The notes below the pieces were generated by a model that was not told where the DNA came from, made no database searches, and was given only the letters and a program-made list of their open reading frames with translations. A DNA stretch of 64,000 nucleotides from Vitrella brassicaformis CCMP3155 (lineage: Eukaryota > Protista > Chromerida): positions 25,785-89,784 of the forward strand of contig CDMY01000389.1 of NCBI GenBank assembly GCA_001179505.1, given 5' to 3'. This document shows positions 34,250 through 42,488 of this stretch, piece after piece. The translations under genes were made by a program, and so were the position numbers. Every line of letters begins with the position of its first letter. Position 1 is the stretch's first letter.

Positions 34250-35200
34250 TAGCTACGCAGGCAATTCAGCTGCCGACACGTTGCGACAGTCCAGTCTAAG
34301 CAACAAATACGCCACCAAGCGCTCCGCCCCGCGCTCCGCCCCGACAGCCATCAGCAAAGGAAGGGCGCGGGCATGGGCGCGGGAGCCCGGGCTGCGGCCA
34401 CCGCTGGGTGCACTGGATGGGCGATCACATAATGGATCTATCGGATGACACCCACACAGACACACAATGAGTGGTCTGCTCTGTTCATTGGGGCACTCCT
34501 TGCCATGTATATTTCTCACTCACTTGCGGCACCGCAGGGTGGGCAGCTTCCCCCTCAGCCTGGGCCCCCACGTCCGCCATATTGACGGGCTCGCCGGCGA
34601 AGGAGCCCCCCCAAGCATCCTCCTGCAGGCAGGCAGGAAGGTAGACATCCGATAGACACGGCCGGTCATGTGGGTGCATTACTGGATTGAACGTCGTGAC
34701 TCACCTCCCGGATCTCAGCCCAGGCTCCCTCCCCGATCTCCTTCCATCGGAAGGCCCGGTCGGCCGATGCGGGTGCTGCTGGGGGCGGCAGCTGCTGCGC
34801 CGACTGCTCATGCGGCAGCACGCAGGTCTGGCGGCGACGCAGGCGGCATGCCTTGGGCGGAGGGGGGATGGCGGGAATGGGCGGCGCCTCGTCATCGCTC
34901 ATGGCTGGCGACACACTCCGGGCGACGGACGAGCTCCCGTCCACGGTGGCGGCAGCTGCCATGATGGGGGTGGTGGGCGGCTGGGGGCTGGGTGGCGAGG
35001 GAGGCGTGGGCAACGCCTTCTCGGCCTTGTCGGCGAGCTGCTGGCGGAGCTGGCGGGTTAGCTGCCGCATATCGTTGATGCTCGCCTGCAGCCTAGTCAC
35101 CTGCTGCTGCTGGGAGGCGACCTGAGGAAATCGGGAAGAGTCCTCTGATGATTGCATGTCGCTCGATGTGAGTGAGAGTCTCTTGTTACCTGTGTTCGAG
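34250..35200 (-). CDS. Coiled-coil/Pro-rich lineage-specific protein exons (paralogue of the ~56430-56720 region)
   Basis: SSEDSSRFPQVASQQQQVTRLQASINDMRQLTRQLRQQLADKAEKALPTPPSPP, followed by GT-AG bounded exons. May be joined to the upstream gene; boundaries uncertain. Confidence 0.45.
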
Positions 35201-35327
35201 AGGCCGCTTCGTTCATGTGGGTCTCGATAAGGCGGCACACAAGCCTGCTCCACACCACACGACACGCATTCATGGCCGCGTGAGGGAGACCCCTCTCTCT
35301 GTGTATGTCGTTTGCTAAGGCACTCAC

Positions 35328-38300
35328 TCACCACATCAGGCTTGTCAACACGACCACAGAACCCAAGATTGCGACCGTGCCCAGTGCCGCCATCGCCCCA
35401 ACTCGTTTCCAGTAGGTCGTGTCGCCCTGGGCGGTCGGTGTTGCCGTGTGGTGGGGGTGGGGTGCGCCGTTGGTGGGTGTGGAGGGGCTGCTTGGGGTCT
35501 GTGCGGCACTGCCGGAGGGGAGGACGCCGCGTTCATGGAGACCCTGAACGAGAGAGCGCACCTCCGCCTCCAGCTTGCTGACGCGGCCCGTGAGCTCGTC
35601 ACGTTGCTCTGTCAGGCTGGTCTTGACGTTGGCGCTGACGTCCTCTCCCCCGAACTCGTCATGATTGCGCAAAAGGCTGCCAGTGCTCCCCTTCTTGAGC
35701 TTCTTAGTAAAACGCGGCAGCCGGCCGAGACCTGCTGACCGCGGCGATTGCGGCGGGGGGCCGTCGGCGGGCCGACTGCCGAGCTGAAACCCACTGTCTG
35801 ATGGGTCACCGGGCGGGTCGGGCGTGGGCTGGTGACCTGACACACACACACACAAAGGGAGAGAGGGAGAGAGAAGACGCATCAGTGTTCAGTGTGTCGT
35901 GGGTGAAGGTAGGTGGAGGTGGAGCCGCTGACACACTGAGGTGGGTGAGTAGATCACCATGGAGGTCAGAGCCGCTGAGTTGGTTTGGGTGCGGCCTCGA
36001 GCCCTTGACACAGTACAGCAGCTCAGGCCTGTCAAGACACTGCGTCAGTGGCGACTGGAGCCTTCCGCACCATCCAGCAGTACGTTGACAGACCGCCTCA
36101 AACACACACATGTGTGTGGCGCAGGAGTCGAAACAGGGGTTCTTGAACACATTCAGGTTGCCTGACATGACACAACCCAGCCAGCCAGCCAGCCCACCAG
36201 ACAGACAGATGCGGACATGACGTGGGGTACGCGGTGACAGACTTGTCCGTCCCGTCCCCCTCCCGCACACCGACCTGTGACAGCGTGTTCGTCGTGGAAG
36301 GGCAGAGACGTGGCGGTGTCGCAGCAGTCGTCCATGGCGGCGAGATGGTTCATGACCACATCTGCTATGGTGAAGATGCCGCTGTCGGCGCACCACTCGA
36401 CCATGGTGCGCAGCTGGGTCTCGTTGCGTTGGATCTTCTTTTCTGAGACGAGCAGGTGGGTGACGGCCTCGTGTGAGTCGCGGAGGGCCTTGATCATGGC
36501 GGAGACGTCGTCCCATATCGGGAGGTACTTGTTGGGTATTCTGAGGTTGGTCAGGACCTTCTGGCTCAGTTCAAGGATGCTCTCGTCAGCCAACAGGTAA
36601 CGGTGGAACGGACTGATATCGGACGTTCTGCACGCACACACACACACACACACAGACACGGGTATGCGTCATGCCTGTGTTCGTCGGTGTGTGTCGAAAG
36701 ATAGCCACCTGTGGTTGAGGAGCGGTGGGCGATTCGCAGCTCGATAGCATTCGAAACACGGGGGCCGCGAGATCGGGGCAGGTACACGCCTGACCAAACA
36801 AACGACACAAATGTGTGACCCCAGTCCCCATCCCCTCGCTGCCTCGCTGCCCAGACTCACCTTCTCTGAGCGTGAGTCGCTGTTGTGCGTCCCTGTGGGC
36901 CATCTCGGCCTTCGAACTCTCAGCCCTCTCGTCCCCTTCCTGCGTACTATCTTCCTCCTCGTCGAGCTCATCATCGGTCACGCCATCAGCGTCATCGCCC
37001 TCGCCCGTCCCGTCCTCACGGCGCGCCATGAAAGCCAGGTGGTCCTGCCGCAGCCGGGCGGACAGGTGATGGTGAAGGTGCAGCAGCATGGTGCCCCACT
37101 GCATCATCGACAGCTCCACTGAGCGGGGCATCGGCAGGTCCGCAGGCACCACAGCCCGGCTCTCGGTCCGCATCAGATGCCACTCAGATACGGGTGCCGC
37201 TTCTGCTGTGCTGCCCAGGATGCCCGAGAGATCACTGTCACTGCTGCCTCCCTGCAGCTGCTGCTGCTGCTGCTGCTCATGTTCTCCTTCGTCACTTTCA
37301 ACGTCGTCCTCGATGGTCAAAACGCCTTTCATTTCAGGGCAGCATTGGGCGCAGAGGTGCTCCAGCCCCTTGACAGCCTGGTTCCAATCCCACACCCCAC
37401 TAGGGGACGGATCGAACGACACATACTCAGACACAAGGTCGCGTGGCTCTGCTGCCGGTGCCGGTTCCATGAGGCCGCCAAGGGACAGAGGGGGCTGCTG
37501 TGGCTGTGGCTGGTTGTTGGCGTTGCGAGCGACGCTTCGTCGGTCCGCCACTTTGGTGGGTAGCATGTTGAGCCTCTGTCCCGCGACAACGGTGTCGAAT
37601 ATGTTGACAATGTAGAGACCCCACTCCCGCTGCAGACTGACAAAAGAGGGCGGACAGACAGACAGACAGACAGAGGACAACGACACAGAGATGTCGACTG
37701 GCCGTCTCCGTCTCTCTCTCTCTCTCTCTCTCTCCGTCTTCGTCTCTCTCACCGAATGACGATAGGGCTGGCGTTGTGCAGTACTTTGGTGACGGCCGGG
37801 TCCTCCACGACGTCCTTCAGCTCGCCCAGGACGCTCTCACGCACATCGTTGGAGCCAGCCAACAGACAGCCGAGGTCCAGCAGCAGGTGGGTCTCCTCAA
37901 CCTCCCCCACACCATCGCCCCCATCGTTGCCGGCCGTGTGCAAGAAGGACAGGTGCAGCACCGACGTGCTGGGCACCCTGCACACATACACACACAGACA
38001 CATACACACACACACACACACACACGTGTAAGAATGGGATGGATGATGTCGGCAGCTTAGGCTGGCTCGCTGTTTTGTTGTCTGTCTTTCTTGCCTGGTG
38101 AGGCTGGTGGGGTGTGGGTGGAGAGTGACGGAGAGCCGACACACCTGACCTCCAGGAGAGATCCAGCTCCCTCTGCAGCAGACTGAACGAACAGCGGACG
38201 GACAGGTTTGTGAATGATATGGATCCGCCAGCACCGTATGTCTTCACGCATTCCCTTCTCCCTCATTTACGCGACTGCATCGTCCCGTGGCCATTCCGTC

Positions 38301-39448
38301 TTGCCCTGAGTGATCCACGCTCGACGGCGCCTCGACGACTGGCGCAGATGCGCGCTCGGTCCTTCGTCACGAACTGACGCTTCTTGAAGCGTTGGTGCAA
38401 CCAGTGGGCACCCTGCACCCACACGAAAAACCCACACATACATTGGCGTCCGCTGCTATGCATCCTGATCAGCATTGAGTCAGTCCTTCTCACCCACCTG
38501 AAGCAGCCCCTCGCCCCTGTTGCCCTCAATCAGGTTGAGTATGATCTGCTCGTGCCTGTGCGGCCGCGGGGGGCCGGGTGCCGGCAGCTCAACTATCATC
38601 GGGCGACGTTTCCTCCCGGTCACAACCACGCCATTCTCAAGCTTCTCATCGCCAAAGTCGGGCAGAAACATCCCCAGACCTGATGACGAGCTGCTGCTGC
38701 CGCTGGTAAAGCCGCCCGGGCGCCTGCTCCTCGGTGGGCGGTCGTAGGCATCGTCAATGGGTGGAAATGAGGGCGGTGGCGGCAGGTCAGTCTGCTGCGC
38801 CAGCCGGTCAGCCCAGCCATAGAGGTCCTTCCTCTCGGTGGTCCTCTCGACCAGCGGCTTGACGGGCGGCAGATTCGCTAGTGTCTGGGGCACGGCGTAT
38901 GTGTTGTCTGCCTGCTGGTCCCTGTCCTTGTCGCCAAGCCGGCTCAGCAGACGATCGATGGCCGAGGAGGCGCCGTCATCGGCTTCTGAGAGAGGGCCGG
39001 AGGGGGGGGAGAGGGGGGCGGGGTAGGGGAGCGGGGGCAGGGGGACGGCTGCTGGGCTGGTACTTGCGCCCGACGATGGTTTGGCAGCAGATGATGCCGA
39101 GTTGGGGAACTTCTTGATCACCCTCGGCCGCCTGTAGGCGGTCTTCTTCTGCCAGCTTGCTGTCCTCAGGTCGACAGCTGCGGCTGATCCATAGCCTTGC
39201 TGACATGCGGCGGCCATGCTGCTCACGTGGCTCAAGGCGGGGCTGATCTGCATGGCCGTCACGTTTATTGCCGTCCAGCCATCTCGAGCCAGGCTTGCGC
39301 ACTCATCGGCGATAATTGTGTCGTACGGCCACTCGATGAGTTGAAGCAGCGGTGCGGCAGATGCATGCGCATGGTGAGAGACCACCAGAAGGGAAAGCAG
39401 CAACAAGGCCCGAGCCAATGACGGCGCCGGTGCAGCGGGAAAAGCCAT
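35328..39448 (-). CDS. Chimeric gene: signal peptide, GH13 alpha-amylase N-fragment, Rrp6/RNase D-like exonuclease+HRDC insert, resumed amylase region I, coiled coil, TM helix
   Basis: Signal peptide MAFPAAPAPSLARALLLLSLLVVSHHAHA; amylase-like LLQLIEWPYDTIIADEC...MQISP; Rrp6-like EDPAVTKVLHNA...LQREWGLYIVNIFDT and EWHLM...LPMP...TMLLHLHHHL; HRDC-like RYLLADESILELSQ; amylase RNETQLRTMVEWCADSGIFTIADVVMNHLAA; TM VGAMAALGTVAILGSVVVLTSLMW. 3' end uncertain: a possible donor at about 35332 could extend it. Confidence 0.7.
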
Positions 39449-40320
39449 TTTCAGTGGGACCTGCCAGCTTCTCAAATGTGCCGCTCTTGGCGGAGTGAAA
39501 GAATGGGCAAAAGGTGGGTTTTTCACGGCCTTCGCGCAGAACTCTTGAAACGTTTGCGAGCTATAAGCTCGCAAATGACGGGAAAGTACGGCGGAAAGAC
39601 TTAGGCGTATGCCAGGCCCTGGGTGCGTGTGTTGATGACGTGAGGGTAAGGCAGCGAATGATCCATCAGATTCGCCGTGATCACTCATCGCGTGTGTCTG
39701 CGTGCGGGTTGATGTTCAGGTCCGTAGCAGTGGGGCGAGGCAGTGCAGAATGGCAGTGCAGGCATGCGCAGTTGATGGACACACATTCGCTAAGCTTCCA
39801 ATGCATTGAATAATGGCGAGAGCGCATATCAACAAAGAAGTGTCATGTCTCGTGCAGTTCGAGTGAGTGGCATCATGAACAAACAACACACCAAGCCCCT
39901 GTCTGCCTATACCTCCCGGGTGGGGTGGGTGTCACACGATGGATGGATGGATGACCTTATTCACGCATACACGCATACATACACTCATCTATCTCTCTGC
40001 CGCGCATGGGACGCCAAACCACCACATCATCTCATCGACTTGACCACATGACATGCATCGCATCAACCAGCAAACAACCCATGACAAACACATGCACCAC
40101 CCACACACCCACGCGCATGTCATTCATTAACCCCATACTATGGGCGTGGAACACGAAACACCACAACACAACACGGAATACTCCCAAGAACGACACATCA
40201 CGTGACAGAAAGCAACAGAAAGAAACGATGAAGGCACTAGCTGATACTGCAGACTAATCACTTAAAGACAAAGAGGCAGGCCAGTGAGGACGTGTGTGTG
40301 TTCCCTTCCCTCACCCTCAG

Positions 40321-41815
40321 TCAGTGGTAGCTGTTGGAGCCTCCCCTAAAGTTGTGGTAGCCGTATACGCAGCACACGGGGGTCTTCTTGCCAGAGTGCT
40401 CGGCGTCGATGAAGGTCAGCTTGCCCTTGGCACACTTGTAGGCCACCTTCGCATAGACGGGCTTGACGCACTTGTCGGCCTCGAGCAGCTCGTAGCCATA
40501 AGGGCACTTGTACTTGTAGCTCAGCTTCTTGCTGGCATAGCACTTGCTGCCGTCATCAGTCAGCTGATACCCATACTTGCACTCGTAGTCGACGTCATAG
40601 GTCTTCTTGGCCACACACTTGCCGCCCTCGAGGTAGCCGTGCTTGCAGTAAGGCGACTTGGCTTCGTATTTGGTCGTCTTGCAGCCCCTGGGCGTCAACT
40701 TGAAGTGCTGAAGCAATGACAGGCACGCACGCAGACGAGTGTGTGTGTGCAGAATCGTCCAGTCCCGTGTTGGCGATGTTCTCACTCGACTCACTCACCG
40801 CTGGGCAGTAGTACTCGAGGTCGGCATAGTCGTATTTGATGCACTTGTGCGTCTCGTCGTCGAACTCAAAGCCGTAGGGGCACTTGGTCTTCTTGTCTTC
40901 ATACTTGTCCGCCCAGCACTTGCTGTAGTCGCTCGAGAGGGAGTAGCCGGATGGGCACTTGTAGTCGGCCTCATAGTAGGCCTTCTTGACACACTTGCCG
41001 TCGTGCAGCGTGTATCCGGCCTTGCACTTGGGAGAGTAGGATGGGTAGCTGTCGATGACCTTGACGCACTTGTGGCCCTCGAGGTAGCCGTGCTTGCAGT
41101 ATGGCACGTTCTTCTCGTATGCTGTCGTCTTGCACCCCTTTGGCGACTCATAAGAATGCTGCACACACACACACACAAACGAGAGAGGGAATGACACACG
41201 CCCATCTGTCTGTGTGGCGTGGTGTGTTCACTCACCGCTGGGCAGTAGTACTCGAGGTCAGCATAGATGTACTTGAAGCACTTGCTCTTGTCGTCGGTCA
41301 GGTCGTAGCCGTAAGGGCACTTGTAGAGCTTGTCTTCATACTTGTCGGCGTAGCACTTGGCCTTGTCGGCTGTGAAGCCGTAGCCGTAAGGGCATTGGTA
41401 CTCGACGGGGTAGTACTCGTAATCGAAGCACTTGTGGCCGTCGAGCTTGCCGTGTTTGCAGTAGGGGATTTTCTTCTCATAGACGTACTTGACGCAGCCC
41501 TCGGCGGTCTTCTTGGTGCCCTGCACCCACAATCAAGGGAACAAATCAAGCAATCAACCGACCAGCACAACACTCAATCTGCTTGCGTCTGCTTACCTCA
41601 GGGCAGTAGTACTTGATGTCCTGGTAGTCGTATTTGACGCACTTATGTGAGTCGGCGTCGAACTCAAAGCCGTAAGGACACTCGTAGTGCACATCAGCCT
41701 TCTTCTCGCACACACCGTGAGTGTAGCCGTAACCGCCATAACCGCTCTGGGCGACAGCTGGCGGCACACATGCCAGCAGCAGCAAGGCCGAAGCAGACAA
41801 GGCAAAGACGGTCAT
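40321..41815 (-). CDS. Secreted Cys/Tyr/Lys-rich repeat protein, oocyst/cyst wall protein (COWP-like)
   Basis: Signal peptide MTVFALSASALLLLACVPPAVAQ; repeated C-P-x-G-[YF]-x-[LF]-x(4-6)-K-C units over four exons; very Tyr-rich; stop at 40321. Confidence 0.8.
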
Positions 41816-42488
41816 AGTGACTGCGGAGGGCTGGCGAATGGCAGCCAAGCGGGGCGGCAACAAGACGGTGAGTGCAGGGAAGTCGCTGTAGTGGCTGTCT
41901 GTGGGTCAGGAAGAGGCTGGGTAAGTGTTTGTTTTCTGTGGTTGATGCCGGGTGCTGAAGGGGCGAAGTGATAAGGGCTGCTGTCGAAGTGAGGCGGTGG
42001 CTCCTCTGCATCGCCATGCTGTCCTTGGGGCTGATCTTTCGGGCTGAAGGACGCACTGATAGATGAGATGAGATAAGGGAGAGATCTCCCATGCGAACTC
42101 CGCACCACCATCTGCCGTTTTTTCCTCAAAAGTGCTCGTACAGTAGCAGTGTGTGAGAAGCACTGAGGTAGCCATCTCGTGGAGCCAACAAAGGGCCAGG
42201 AGGCCTCGAGGGAAGCGACCTTGGATCCGATCGAGTGAGGATCGAATTTGTGTTTTTCTTGCTTTTGGCAAATTCGTTTTGGGATTTTTTCGCATGAGCC
42301 GGTCCTCTGTGTGACCATACACACATGAGATGTAAGAAATTCGGGAAAAGAGAGGGACAGAAGAAATTTCCTGGTGAGAATTTGAGCTCGCAAACAACCC
42401 CTCTTTTCTCTTCGGCTTGCGAGGAGGTTTACTGATGAAAGGCGCTCGTAGATAGAGTGGCTATGGCAGCCTGACGGACTGACGGACG

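What the first reader, a model, noticed from the sequence alone, without database searches (positions are those of the whole stretch)
35328..39448. Alpha-amylase split by an inserted Rrp6/RNase D exonuclease-HRDC module
The first exon encodes a signal peptide and the GH13 beta1/beta2 motifs LLQLIEWPYDTIIADEC...MQISP (compare animal/actinobacterial-type amylase HLFEW...ECE...VQVSP). The same ORF (38480-39688) then runs into an Rrp6-like region (PHRHEQII, similar to HPYE.EI). Middle exons give KVLHNA...LQREWGLYIVNIFDT (Rrp6: KVFHGAD...LQKDFGLYVVNMFDT). One exon (ORF 36153-36659) carries HRDC-like RYLLADESILELSQ and then directly RNETQLRTMVEWCADSGIFTIADVVMNHLAA, which is amylase conserved region I (G...F..MV..C...GV.I..D.V.NHM). 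In normal amylases this motif lies only about 25 residues after QVSP. Both junctions sit inside single open exons, so this is not a gene-model merge. A nuclear RNA-decay domain nested in a secreted glycosidase fold is an architecture I do not recognise.
Basis: partly seen in the sequence, partly recalled or inferred. Interest (0 to 1): 0.85.

Follow-up and report, generated by a model that had tools for sequence, protein, structure and literature searches.

The report
Decayed Rrp6-like gene, doubtful amylase flanks
A gene found only in the alga Vitrella carries a worn-out remnant of an RNA-trimming enzyme (Rrp6), while its claimed "split amylase" halves are too weakly supported to accept and the reading frame between the parts is broken, so it looks like a decaying mosaic gene rather than a new enzyme design.

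Summary
The window is from Vitrella brassicaformis CCMP3155.

- **Secure homology.** Only about 50 residues around the ExoII motif, spanning the exon 3/4 junction, match Rrp6/EXOSC10 (PDB E=9e-6; Pfam PF01612 E=1e-5). The catalytic ExoII Asp is Ile.
- **Not detected.** HRDC, PMC2NT and the ExoI and ExoIII motifs are not found by any profile.
- **GH13 support is sub-threshold.** Pfam gives nothing. NCBIfam gives seven GH13 families at E=0.02-0.1 on the DVVMNH motif. Protein-language-model neighbours are amylase fragments (0.93 for the N-terminal piece). BLASTP against E. coli AmyA sits at window noise level. No match to regions II-IV or the catalytic triad was found.
- **Rival reading of exon 6.** The same stretch matches two ankyrin repeats about equally well.
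- **Transcript evidence.** One spliced cDNA contig joins exons 4 to 8, so the two annotated genes (CEM08930.1, CEM08928.1) share a transcript. The exonuclease frame meets a stop 20 codons into exon 6. Exon 6 looks coding in another frame from its first codon, which implies a one-base frame break.
- **Relatives.** The three large protein searches returned no ortholog.

Verdict: a degenerate, probably decaying chimeric gene. The scan has not reported this locus before; its notes describe other amylase fusions and an ankyrin-Rrp6-like gene in this genome.

The parts
39359..39448 (-). Probable start codon (39448) and a signal-peptide-like hydrophobic N-terminus. The public model P0024 starts 66 codons further in, at the Met of MQISP.
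   Evidence: ORF and translation. The in-frame stretch upstream, 39688-39449, has no coding-like codon bias (GC3 0.46, log-likelihood ratio -0.01 per codon). The signal peptide is judged by eye only.
39149..39358 (-). N-terminal segment resembling GH13 (LLQLIEW...ECA...MQISP...GYG..VDL).
   Evidence: ESM-Atlas feature neighbours are alpha-amylase N-terminal fragments scoring 0.93/0.93/0.92/0.91. BLASTP to E. coli AmyA residues 6-64 gives E=0.039 for the single comparison, but that is noise level across the whole window. No PDB, Pfam or NCBIfam hit at E<=10. Weakly coding-like in frame.
38498..39448 (-). Exon 1: one open frame from the signal peptide through a Pro/Ser-rich low-complexity stretch to ...EGLLQ, with a GT donor at 38497.
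   Evidence: Codon bias is positive in this frame only. No family hit and no PDB hit for the second half. This exon and its junctions are not covered by cDNA.
38276..38412 (-). Exon 2 as in the public model (frame 0). By eye AVERG sits where Rrp6 has the ExoI motif AVDLE.
   Evidence: P0024 sequence. Codon statistics favour frame 0. An alternative phase-consistent reading exists (donors 38494 and 38271). ExoI is not detected by any search.
37753..37977 (-). Exon 3, ending ...DPAVTKVLHNASPIVI(R).
   Evidence: Strong coding signal (GC3 0.84). Part of the PF01612 and Rrp6 match.
37563..37824 (-). ExoII-centred Rrp6/EXOSC10-like stretch, split by the exon 3/4 intron. This is the only statistically secure homology at the locus.
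   Evidence: PDB phmmer finds human, yeast and trypanosome Rrp6 at E 9e-6 to 2e-4. PF01612 scores E 1e-5 to 3e-5, just above the gathering score, over profile positions 60-112 of 173. HNASPIVIR aligns to HGADSDIEW, so the ExoII Asp is Ile.
36861..37636 (-). Exon 4: LQREWGLYIVNIFDT..., then long Gln- and acid-rich inserts. By eye MMQWGTMLL sits where ExoIII has YARDDTHYLL.
   Evidence: Its last 64 nt are present in cDNA L001. ExoIII is not detected by any search.
36709..36789 (-). Exon 5 (81 nt, open in all three frames).
   Evidence: Spliced between exons 4 and 6 in cDNA L001. Its codon statistics are uninformative.
36275..36627 (-). Exon 6. The frame coming from exon 5 stops at TGA 36568-36566, which is the end of P0024. 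A different frame is open and strongly coding-like from the first codon and carries the HRDC-like and DVVMNH motifs. The annotated start of P0002 is ATG 36497.
   Evidence: cDNA junction. The frame carrying the motifs (frame 1) has log-likelihood ratio +0.36 per codon and GC3 0.79-0.83. The frame entered from exon 5 (frame 2) has -0.39 and several stops.
36324..36425 (-). Motif NETQLRTMVEWCADSGIFTIADVVMNHLAAM, readable either as GH13 conserved region I or as the second of two ankyrin-like repeats.
   Evidence: GH13 reading: PDB amylases at E=0.063, seven GH13 NCBIfam models at E 0.023-0.11, and Atlas neighbours 96 of 100 GH13/GH70 but scoring only 0.67-0.75. Ankyrin reading: besides the locus's own two models, the hits I examined in the 1.84-billion-protein library were ankyrin-repeat proteins, with P0006 an exception (E 5e-9 to 1e-3, multi-stretch). 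A custom two-repeat ankyrin HMM ranks this ORF first in the window at E=0.0014. Neither Pfam Ank nor Pfam PF00128 hits at E<=10.
35958..36161 (-). Exon 7: Cys-rich, with a short stretch resembling the eukaryotic RdRP catalytic loop (GSRPHPNQLSGSDLHG).
   Evidence: In cDNA L001. Pfam RdRP scores E=0.0085, below its cut-off. PDB RDR2 scores E=0.26. Treated as noise level.
35328..35836 (-). Exon 8: a coiled-coil-like stretch and a C-terminal hydrophobic tail ending in a stop at 35330-35328. The cDNA lacks 11 nt (about 35780-35770), which breaks this frame.
   Evidence: The transmembrane tail is judged by eye.

Best explanation
This is a transcribed, multi-exon locus with no relative found outside Vitrella brassicaformis. 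It encodes, or until recently encoded, one long secretory-type protein built from degenerate pieces of older genes.

The only securely identifiable piece is a roughly 50-residue remnant of an Rrp6/EXOSC10-type DEDD 3'-5' exonuclease around the ExoII motif. Its catalytic Asp is replaced by Ile, and the other catalytic motifs are eroded beyond detection. It therefore cannot act as an exonuclease. At most it is a scaffold or an RNA-binding pseudoenzyme (inference).

The flanking amylase-like motifs are sub-threshold look-alikes or very eroded relics. No match to the GH13 catalytic regions II-IV was found, so there is no amylase activity either.

In today's mRNA the exonuclease frame runs from exon 1 to a stop 20 codons into exon 6. 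Exon 6 onward keeps a strong coding signature in another frame that has no upstream start. The simplest reading is a one-base frame break at or near the exon 5/6 junction of a formerly continuous ORF. That would make this a chimeric gene in decay, which gene predictors report as two adjacent genes.

Shown: the Rrp6 ExoII homology, the loss of the Asp, the splicing of exons 4-8 in one cDNA, and the frame discontinuity. Inferred: the former continuity of the ORF, the decay, and the lack of activity.
For: - The organism and the two public models are CEM08930.1 (678 aa, named a 3'-5' exonuclease domain-containing protein) and CEM08928.1 (529 aa, uncharacterised).
- Rrp6 homology is confined to ExoII: PDB E=9e-6 and PF01612 at 24.5-25.8 bits over profile positions 60-112 of 173. 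HGADSDIEW aligns to HNASPIVIR.
- No Pfam, NCBIfam or PDB signal exists for the rest of the exonuclease gene.
- cDNA contig L001 (JGI 3300017148, 951 nt) matches the genome at 100% across exons 4 to 7 with introns removed. In it the exon 4/5 frame reads ...STTERPISVRSTVTCWLTRASLN and then a stop.
- Exon 6 is coding-like in the other frame even upstream of the annotated Met: +0.36 per codon, GC3 0.79, no stops. The annotated tail frame scores -0.39 with 2 stops.
- No slippery heptamer lies before the stop (sequence).
- The cDNA carries an 11-nt frame-breaking deletion in exon 8.
- The three large protein searches returned no ortholog. Exon 1 found nothing. Exons 2-4 found only the locus's own model. 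Exon 6 found only its own models plus ankyrin proteins.
- ESMFold confidence for P0002 is poor (pTM 0.17).
Against: - The ORFs are very long (about 400 codons twice) and codon bias is good in every exon. Decay, if real, is recent, or the 5' ORF is still a functional gene.
- Only one cDNA contig is available and it does not cover exons 1-3. A major isoform with another exon 5/6 junction cannot be excluded.
- The 11-nt gap could be an assembly error.
- Protein-language-model neighbours point to GH13 for three separate pieces, so the amylase relics may be real rather than look-alikes.
Confidence: 0.55

Rival explanations
1. A secreted GH13 alpha-amylase gene was interrupted between strand beta2 and the alpha2/beta3 'region I' by an Rrp6-type exonuclease(-HRDC) block, giving one long chimeric ORF. 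That ORF has since lost both catalytic centres and suffered one frame break.
For: - The N-terminal piece follows the signal peptide directly and aligns to AmyA residues 6-64. The exon 6 motif aligns to AmyA 79-111, which is adjacent and collinear.
- DVVMNH matches the GH13 region I signature. All seven NCBIfam hits are GH13 families at the correct profile position, and the top PDB hits are amylases.
- Atlas feature neighbours are GH13 for the N-terminal piece (0.93), for exon 6, and for residues 58-215 of P0002.
- Codon bias is continuous across all exons.
- Other notes of this scan report many secreted amylase fusions in this genome (not checked here).
- There is a precedent for a GH13 enzyme split by a foreign domain in this lineage: the BE2-GT4-BE2 fusion (bioRxiv 10.64898/2026.09.25.754361).
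Against: - No GH13 profile is significant. Pfam gives none at E<=10, and the NCBIfam scores of 10-13 bits sit against cut-offs of 380-1400.
- The N-terminal piece has no HMM or PDB hit at all.
- The AmyA BLASTP scores are ordinary for this window.
- No match to regions II-IV was found.
- Atlas scores for two of the three pieces are below 0.8.
- Exon 6 fits ankyrin repeats equally well.
- AlphaFold2 single-sequence models are uninformative (pLDDT 42-44).
Confidence: 0.25
2. No amylase is involved. The locus is a divergent member of a Vitrella family that joins an Rrp6-like exonuclease core to ankyrin repeats, and exon 6 encodes two or three eroded ankyrin repeats. The GH13 resemblances are coincidences of short helix-strand motifs.
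For: - In the search of 1.84 billion representatives, the non-self hits I examined were ankyrin-repeat proteins (P0006 was an exception). They score E 5e-9 to 1e-3 and align over about 70 residues, which is two repeats.
- A two-repeat ankyrin HMM ranks the exon 6 ORF first of 1462 window pieces at E=0.0014, with the next at 0.27.
- The ankyrin protein p19INK4d is among the PDB hits.
Against: - Curated Pfam Ank models do not hit at E<=10.
- The custom HMM was built from proteins already selected for resemblance to exon 6.
- The library E-values are inflated by summing many near-identical repeats. The best single stretch scores 19.5 bits.
- Atlas neighbours of exon 6 include no ankyrin cluster.
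- The N-terminal piece has no ankyrin signal.
Confidence: 0.15
3. The public annotation is right: these are two independent genes, an exonuclease-like gene ending in exon 6 and a downstream tail-anchored coiled-coil protein starting at Met 36497. The cDNA joins them only through read-through or overlapping transcription units.
For: The two public models are CEM08930.1 and CEM08928.1. The stop at 36568-36566 and the ATG at 36497 are both present in the cDNA.
Against: - The 43 codons of exon 6 upstream of that Met carry as strong a coding signature as any exon here, in the downstream gene's frame.
- The exon 6 acceptor is used with exon 5 as its donor.
- A second cistron 70 nt after a stop in another frame has no known means of translation here.
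Confidence: 0.05

Closest known systems
Rrp6 / EXOSC10 (nuclear exosome DEDD-Y 3'-5' exonuclease; Pfam PF01612 DNA_pol_A_exo1)
   Same: The ExoII-centred stretch (...DPAVTKVLHNA....LQREWGLYIVNIFDT) matches human, yeast and trypanosome Rrp6 specifically. It also passes the PF01612 gathering score.
   Different: - The ExoII Asp is Ile.
- The ExoI and ExoIII motifs, PMC2NT and HRDC are not detectable.
- There are large acidic and Gln-rich inserts.
- It has a signal-peptide-like start instead of a nuclear protein's N-terminus.
- The frame is broken before the HRDC-like stretch.
GH13 alpha-amylases (animal/actinobacterial and AmyA types)
   Same: A beta1-alpha1-beta2-like pattern follows the signal peptide, and there is an exact D-V-V-x-N-H region I signature. 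The two are collinear and adjacent in AmyA numbering.
   Different: No significant profile match exists. No match to region II (nucleophile Asp), region III (Glu) or region IV (Asp) was found. About 2.7 kb of other coding sequence lies between the two motifs.
BE2-GT4-BE2 fusion of Myzozoa: a GH13_8 branching enzyme disrupted by an inserted GT4 glycosyltransferase (bioRxiv 10.64898/2026.09.25.754361)
   Same: It is a GH13 gene interrupted by a foreign enzyme domain in the same lineage (chromerids, apicomplexans, dinoflagellates).
   Different: That fusion is conserved across Myzozoa and is genetically essential. This locus has no ortholog in the searches run, no intact domains and a broken frame.
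Ankyrin repeats
   Same: Exon 6 residues about 28-105 align to two consecutive repeats of the GRTALSWAAENGHEAVVDLLL type.
   Different: Curated Pfam ankyrin models do not recognise it. The TPLH and Gly signature positions are mostly lost.
Catalytically dead exonuclease-like domains used for binding, for example Drosophila Egalitarian (a weak PDB hit here at E=1.3; its biology is from my own knowledge)
   Same: It has a DEDD-fold relic without the catalytic set, which could serve as a binding module.
   Different: No evidence of RNA binding exists here. The homology to Egalitarian itself is not significant.

Membership tests
GH13 alpha-amylase | Significant match to a GH13 profile (Pfam PF00128 or curated NCBIfam models) | tested here: not met
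   Pfam gives no hit at E<=10 for either piece, P0001, P0002 or P0024. NCBIfam gives seven GH13 models at E 0.023-0.11 and 10-13 bits, against cut-offs of 380-1400.
GH13 alpha-amylase | Conserved region I (D-x-x-x-N-H on strand beta3) | tested here: inconclusive
   DVVMNH is present. PDB amylases score E=0.063 and AmyA 79-111 scores E=0.027 pairwise, but that is noise level across the window. An ankyrin reading fits equally well.
GH13 alpha-amylase | Region II with the nucleophile Asp, region III with the Glu proton donor, and region IV (NHD) | tested here: not met
   There is no collinear match downstream of region I in P0002 against AmyA, the PDB, Pfam or NCBIfam. Only by-eye fragments remain (GFQLGS, LLRNHDE).
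GH13 alpha-amylase | N-terminal beta1-alpha1-beta2 of the (beta/alpha)8 barrel | tested here: inconclusive
   Atlas feature neighbours score 0.93 to amylase N-terminal fragments. AmyA 6-64 scores E=0.039 pairwise. There is no HMM or PDB hit. The AlphaFold2 model has pLDDT 42.6.
Rrp6 / RNase D (DEDD-Y exonuclease) | Match to the 3'-5' exonuclease profile PF01612 and to Rrp6 structures | tested here: met
   PF01612 scores 24.5-25.8 bits against a cut-off of 23.6, but only over profile positions 60-112 of 173. Thirteen Rrp6/EXOSC10 chains score E 9e-6 to 2e-4.
Rrp6 / RNase D (DEDD-Y exonuclease) | ExoII catalytic Asp (human D371, yeast D296; residue numbering from my own knowledge) | tested here: not met
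   The alignment pairs HGADSDIEW with HNASPIVIR, so the Asp position is Ile.
Rrp6 / RNase D (DEDD-Y exonuclease) | ExoI D-x-E and ExoIII Y-x3-D motifs | tested here: inconclusive
   No search aligns these parts. By eye AVERG stands for AVDLE and MMQWG for YARDD, which would mean both are lost.
Rrp6 / RNase D (DEDD-Y exonuclease) | HRDC domain (PF00570), and PMC2NT for Rrp6 proper | tested here: not met
   No Pfam hit at E<=10 in any frame or model. The HRDC-like peptide lies in a frame not continuous with the exonuclease frame in the cDNA.
Ankyrin repeat proteins | Match to curated ankyrin repeat profiles, with tandem 33-residue units | tested here: inconclusive
   Pfam Ank models give no hit at E<=10. 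A custom two-repeat HMM gives E=0.0014 and first rank in the window. Library hits are multi-stretch, with the best single stretch at 19.5 bits.

The most novel reading that the evidence does not exclude
A secreted GH13 amylase gene of Vitrella was split between beta2 and region I by an in-frame Rrp6-type exonuclease block. The result was translated for some time as one chimeric protein. It would be a second, independent case, after the BE2-GT4 fusion, of a GH13 barrel interrupted by a foreign enzyme domain in Myzozoa, caught here in the act of decaying.
Probability: 0.25. Interest if true: 0.55.

Novelty: new member of a known kind. Interest (0 to 1): 0.3.

Why it matters
If the chimera reading were right, the locus would show how readily this lineage builds, and then discards, enzymes with one domain inserted inside another. 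It would also be a natural example of a nuclear RNA-decay module moved into a secretory protein.

As the evidence stands, its value is more modest.
- It documents a catalytically dead Rrp6-like relic, with no relative found outside Vitrella, that is already named from its Pfam hit in public databases.
- It shows that two annotated Vitrella genes lie on one transcript with a frame break between them, which is worth correcting in the annotation.
- It is a caution that short signature motifs (DVVxNH, ISP, DLxG) can mimic several families at once in fast-evolving GC-rich genes.

Tried and rejected
1. **Searches for relatives.** Exon 1 found nothing among 8000 scored candidates. The exon 4 region and P0024 residues 255-600 found only the locus's own model. 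Low-complexity words probably saturated the candidate list, and the Rrp6 match (28 bits) is too weak for that database size, so these blanks say little about distant paralogs.
2. **Scans of JGI metagenome contigs.** Scans with P0024 and P0001 found nothing. The second scan also missed L001 itself, so that collection does not hold the transcript sample and both blanks are uninformative.
3. **Narrow AmyA-family HMM.** I built it from 81 enterobacterial sequences. It gave no signal for either piece (exon 6 E=13, exon 1 absent), but it is too narrow to be a fair GH13 test.
4. **AlphaFold2 single-sequence models.** Models of both amylase-like pieces had pLDDT 42-44 and were all-helical. They are unusable, so I ran no fold search.
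5. **Transposon or gene-capture origin.** No terminal inverted or direct repeats bound the Rrp6-like block. The repeat families found were (CA)n-type intron tracts (TG-rich on the coding strand) and short low-identity matches.
6. **Programmed -1 frameshifting at exon 5/6.** No slippery heptamer lies in the 20 codons before the stop.
7. **Alternative splice sites that would restore the frame.** The only phase-correct alternative donor would leave a 30-nt intron, much shorter than the 81-434 nt of the six introns modelled here.
8. **RdRP-like and cyanovirin-like hits in exon 7.** Treated as noise.
9. **Nested-gene model.** In this model an amylase exon 1 would be spliced directly to exon 6. The candidate donor at 39225 (CAC|GTGAGC) is in the wrong phase for the exon 6 frame that carries the motifs.

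Full report
**What is there.** The window is from Vitrella brassicaformis CCMP3155. On the minus strand between 39448 and 35328 lies a run of open exons.
- Public annotation places two genes here. CEM08930.1 (P0024, 678 aa) is named a 3'-5' exonuclease domain-containing protein. It starts at the Met of MQISP and ends in exon 6.
- CEM08928.1 (P0002, 529 aa) is uncharacterised. It starts at Met 36497 inside exon 6 and runs on downstream.
- The ORF of exon 1 continues 66 codons upstream of the annotated start, to a Met at 39448 followed by a signal-peptide-like hydrophobic stretch.
- Further upstream the in-frame sequence loses all coding character.

**The Rrp6-like part is real but minimal and catalytically dead.**
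- Single exons gave nothing significant in Pfam.
- The spliced public model matches PF01612 just above its gathering score. It scores 24.5-25.8 bits against 23.6, over profile positions 60-112 of 173.
- It also matches 13 distinct Rrp6/EXOSC10 chains from human, yeast and trypanosome at E 9e-6 to 2e-4.
- The match is a single stretch of about 48 residues spanning the exon 3/4 junction. This also confirms that junction.
- Within it, HGADSDIEW of EXOSC10 aligns to HNASPIVIR, so the ExoII catalytic Asp is Ile.
- Nothing else of Rrp6 is detectable. The 236 residues before the match have no PDB hit at E<=10. There is no HRDC or PMC2NT hit at E<=10 in any model or frame.
- By eye the ExoI and ExoIII positions read AVERG and MMQWG, which would mean the whole DEDD-Y set is gone.

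**The amylase reading is not established.**
- *N-terminal piece (39358-39149).* It has no PDB, Pfam or NCBIfam hit at E<=10.
- *Exon 6 motif, NETQLRTMVEWCADSGIFTIADVVMNH.* Its best PDB hits are alpha-amylases at E=0.063, at the correct position. All seven of its NCBIfam hits are GH13 families at E 0.023-0.11, but with scores of 10-13 bits.
- *Comparison with E. coli AmyA, fetched as a reference.* The two pieces align to residues 6-64 and 79-111, adjacent and collinear, at E of about 0.03-0.04 per single comparison.
- *Window-wide control.* When AmyA is compared with all 1462 six-frame pieces of the window, these two rank only 18th and 32nd. That similarity is therefore at noise level.
- *Protein-language-model neighbours.* They are GH13 fragments for the N-terminal piece (0.93, a range reached by 4-10% of shuffled sequences), for exon 6 (0.67-0.75) and for P0002 residues 58-215 (0.72-0.78). 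This is the best support for GH13 ancestry.
- *Downstream regions.* Nothing downstream matches GH13 regions II-IV.
- *Structure.* ESMFold and AlphaFold2 give no confident fold.

**A competing reading of exon 6.**
- In an exhaustive search of 1.84 billion representatives, exon 6 found its own two models. The other hits I examined were ankyrin-repeat proteins, with P0006 an exception. They score E 5e-9 to 1e-3 and align over two consecutive repeats.
- A two-repeat ankyrin HMM ranks the exon 6 ORF first in the whole window, at E=0.0014 against 0.27 for the next piece.
- These figures are inflated. The library E-values sum many near-identical repeats, and the HMM was built from proteins chosen for resemblance to exon 6. 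Curated Pfam ankyrin models do not hit.
- Ankyrin and GH13 region I are therefore about equally, and weakly, supported for the same 35-70 residues.
- An unchecked note of this scan reports an ankyrin array fused to an RRP6-like exonuclease elsewhere in this genome. Other notes report many secreted amylase fusions. Either family could be the donor.

**Transcript evidence.**
- One protein hit (P0001) comes from a 951-nt JGI contig (3300017148, Ga0186167_114524; L001).
- The contig is the genome sequence with four introns removed. It contains the end of exon 4 and then exons 5, 6, 7 and 8, so it derives from RNA.
- It shows that the two annotated genes share one transcript.
- It also shows that exon 5 joins exon 6 so that the exonuclease frame reads 20 codons and then stops at 36568-36566, as annotated. 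The frame carrying the HRDC-like and DVVMNH peptides is one base off.
- Codon statistics trained on other long ORFs of the window show which frame of exon 6 is coding-like. The frame carrying the peptides scores +0.36 per codon with GC3 0.79-0.83 from its first codon, including the 43 codons upstream of the annotated Met. The annotated tail frame scores -0.39.
- The simplest account is a formerly continuous ORF with a one-base frame lesion at or near the exon 5/6 junction. The lesion is present in both genome and cDNA.
- There is no slippery site for programmed frameshifting. No plausible alternative splice site restores the frame.
- The cDNA also lacks 11 nt in exon 8, which breaks the downstream ORF.

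**Conclusion.**
- The locus is a fast-evolving mosaic gene with no relative found outside Vitrella. The three large protein searches returned no ortholog.
- Its only secure ancestry is an Rrp6-type exonuclease core that has lost its chemistry.
- It is not a working amylase and not a working exonuclease. In the one transcript available it is not a single ORF.
- The split-amylase ancestry remains possible; I put it at about one in four. It would have a precedent in the BE2-GT4-BE2 fusion of Myzozoa (bioRxiv 10.64898/2026.09.25.754361).
- It cannot be accepted on present evidence.

Noticed in passing
window 36709/36627 (exon 5/6 junction); stop at 36568-36566; ATG at 36497: The public Vitrella annotation splits one transcript into two genes (CEM08930.1 and CEM08928.1). 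The split coincides with a one-base frame discontinuity seen in both genome and cDNA. The 43 codons of exon 6 before the downstream gene's annotated Met look coding.
   Followed up: yes
window about 35780-35770 (exon 8), versus L001 757-758: The cDNA contig lacks 11 nt (GGCAGTCGGCC) present in the genome, which shifts the downstream ORF to an early stop. It could be a strain polymorphism or an assembly error.
   Followed up: partly
window 36015-35958 (exon 7): The peptide LLYCVKGSRPHPNQLSGSDLHG resembles the catalytic loop of eukaryotic RNA-dependent RNA polymerases (GERPHPNECSGGDLDGD). Pfam RdRP scores E=0.0085 and PDB RDR2 scores E=0.26. Both are below significance, and the DLDGD Asp residues are not kept.
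   Followed up: partly
window 40321-41863, minus strand: The upstream neighbour has a signal-peptide-like start followed by many copies of a Cys-rich unit (...KC.K..Y....Y.CPYGYEL...). Only weak cEGF-like Pfam hits were found (E 0.001-0.02), and the introns again carry TG-rich tracts.
   Followed up: partly
window 36632-36672, 37980-38040, 35836-35868: Several introns of this locus end in (TG)n/(TGTC)n tracts just before the acceptor AG. Exons 2 and 3 begin with the same GGTGCCCA after a near-identical acceptor context (repeat family D4).
   Followed up: no
window 34666-35334, minus strand: Directly downstream lies a Gln-rich coiled-coil-like ORF. The public model P0002 splices it onto exon 8 through a GT donor overlapping the exon 8 stop codon. 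No cDNA covers this join.
   Followed up: no
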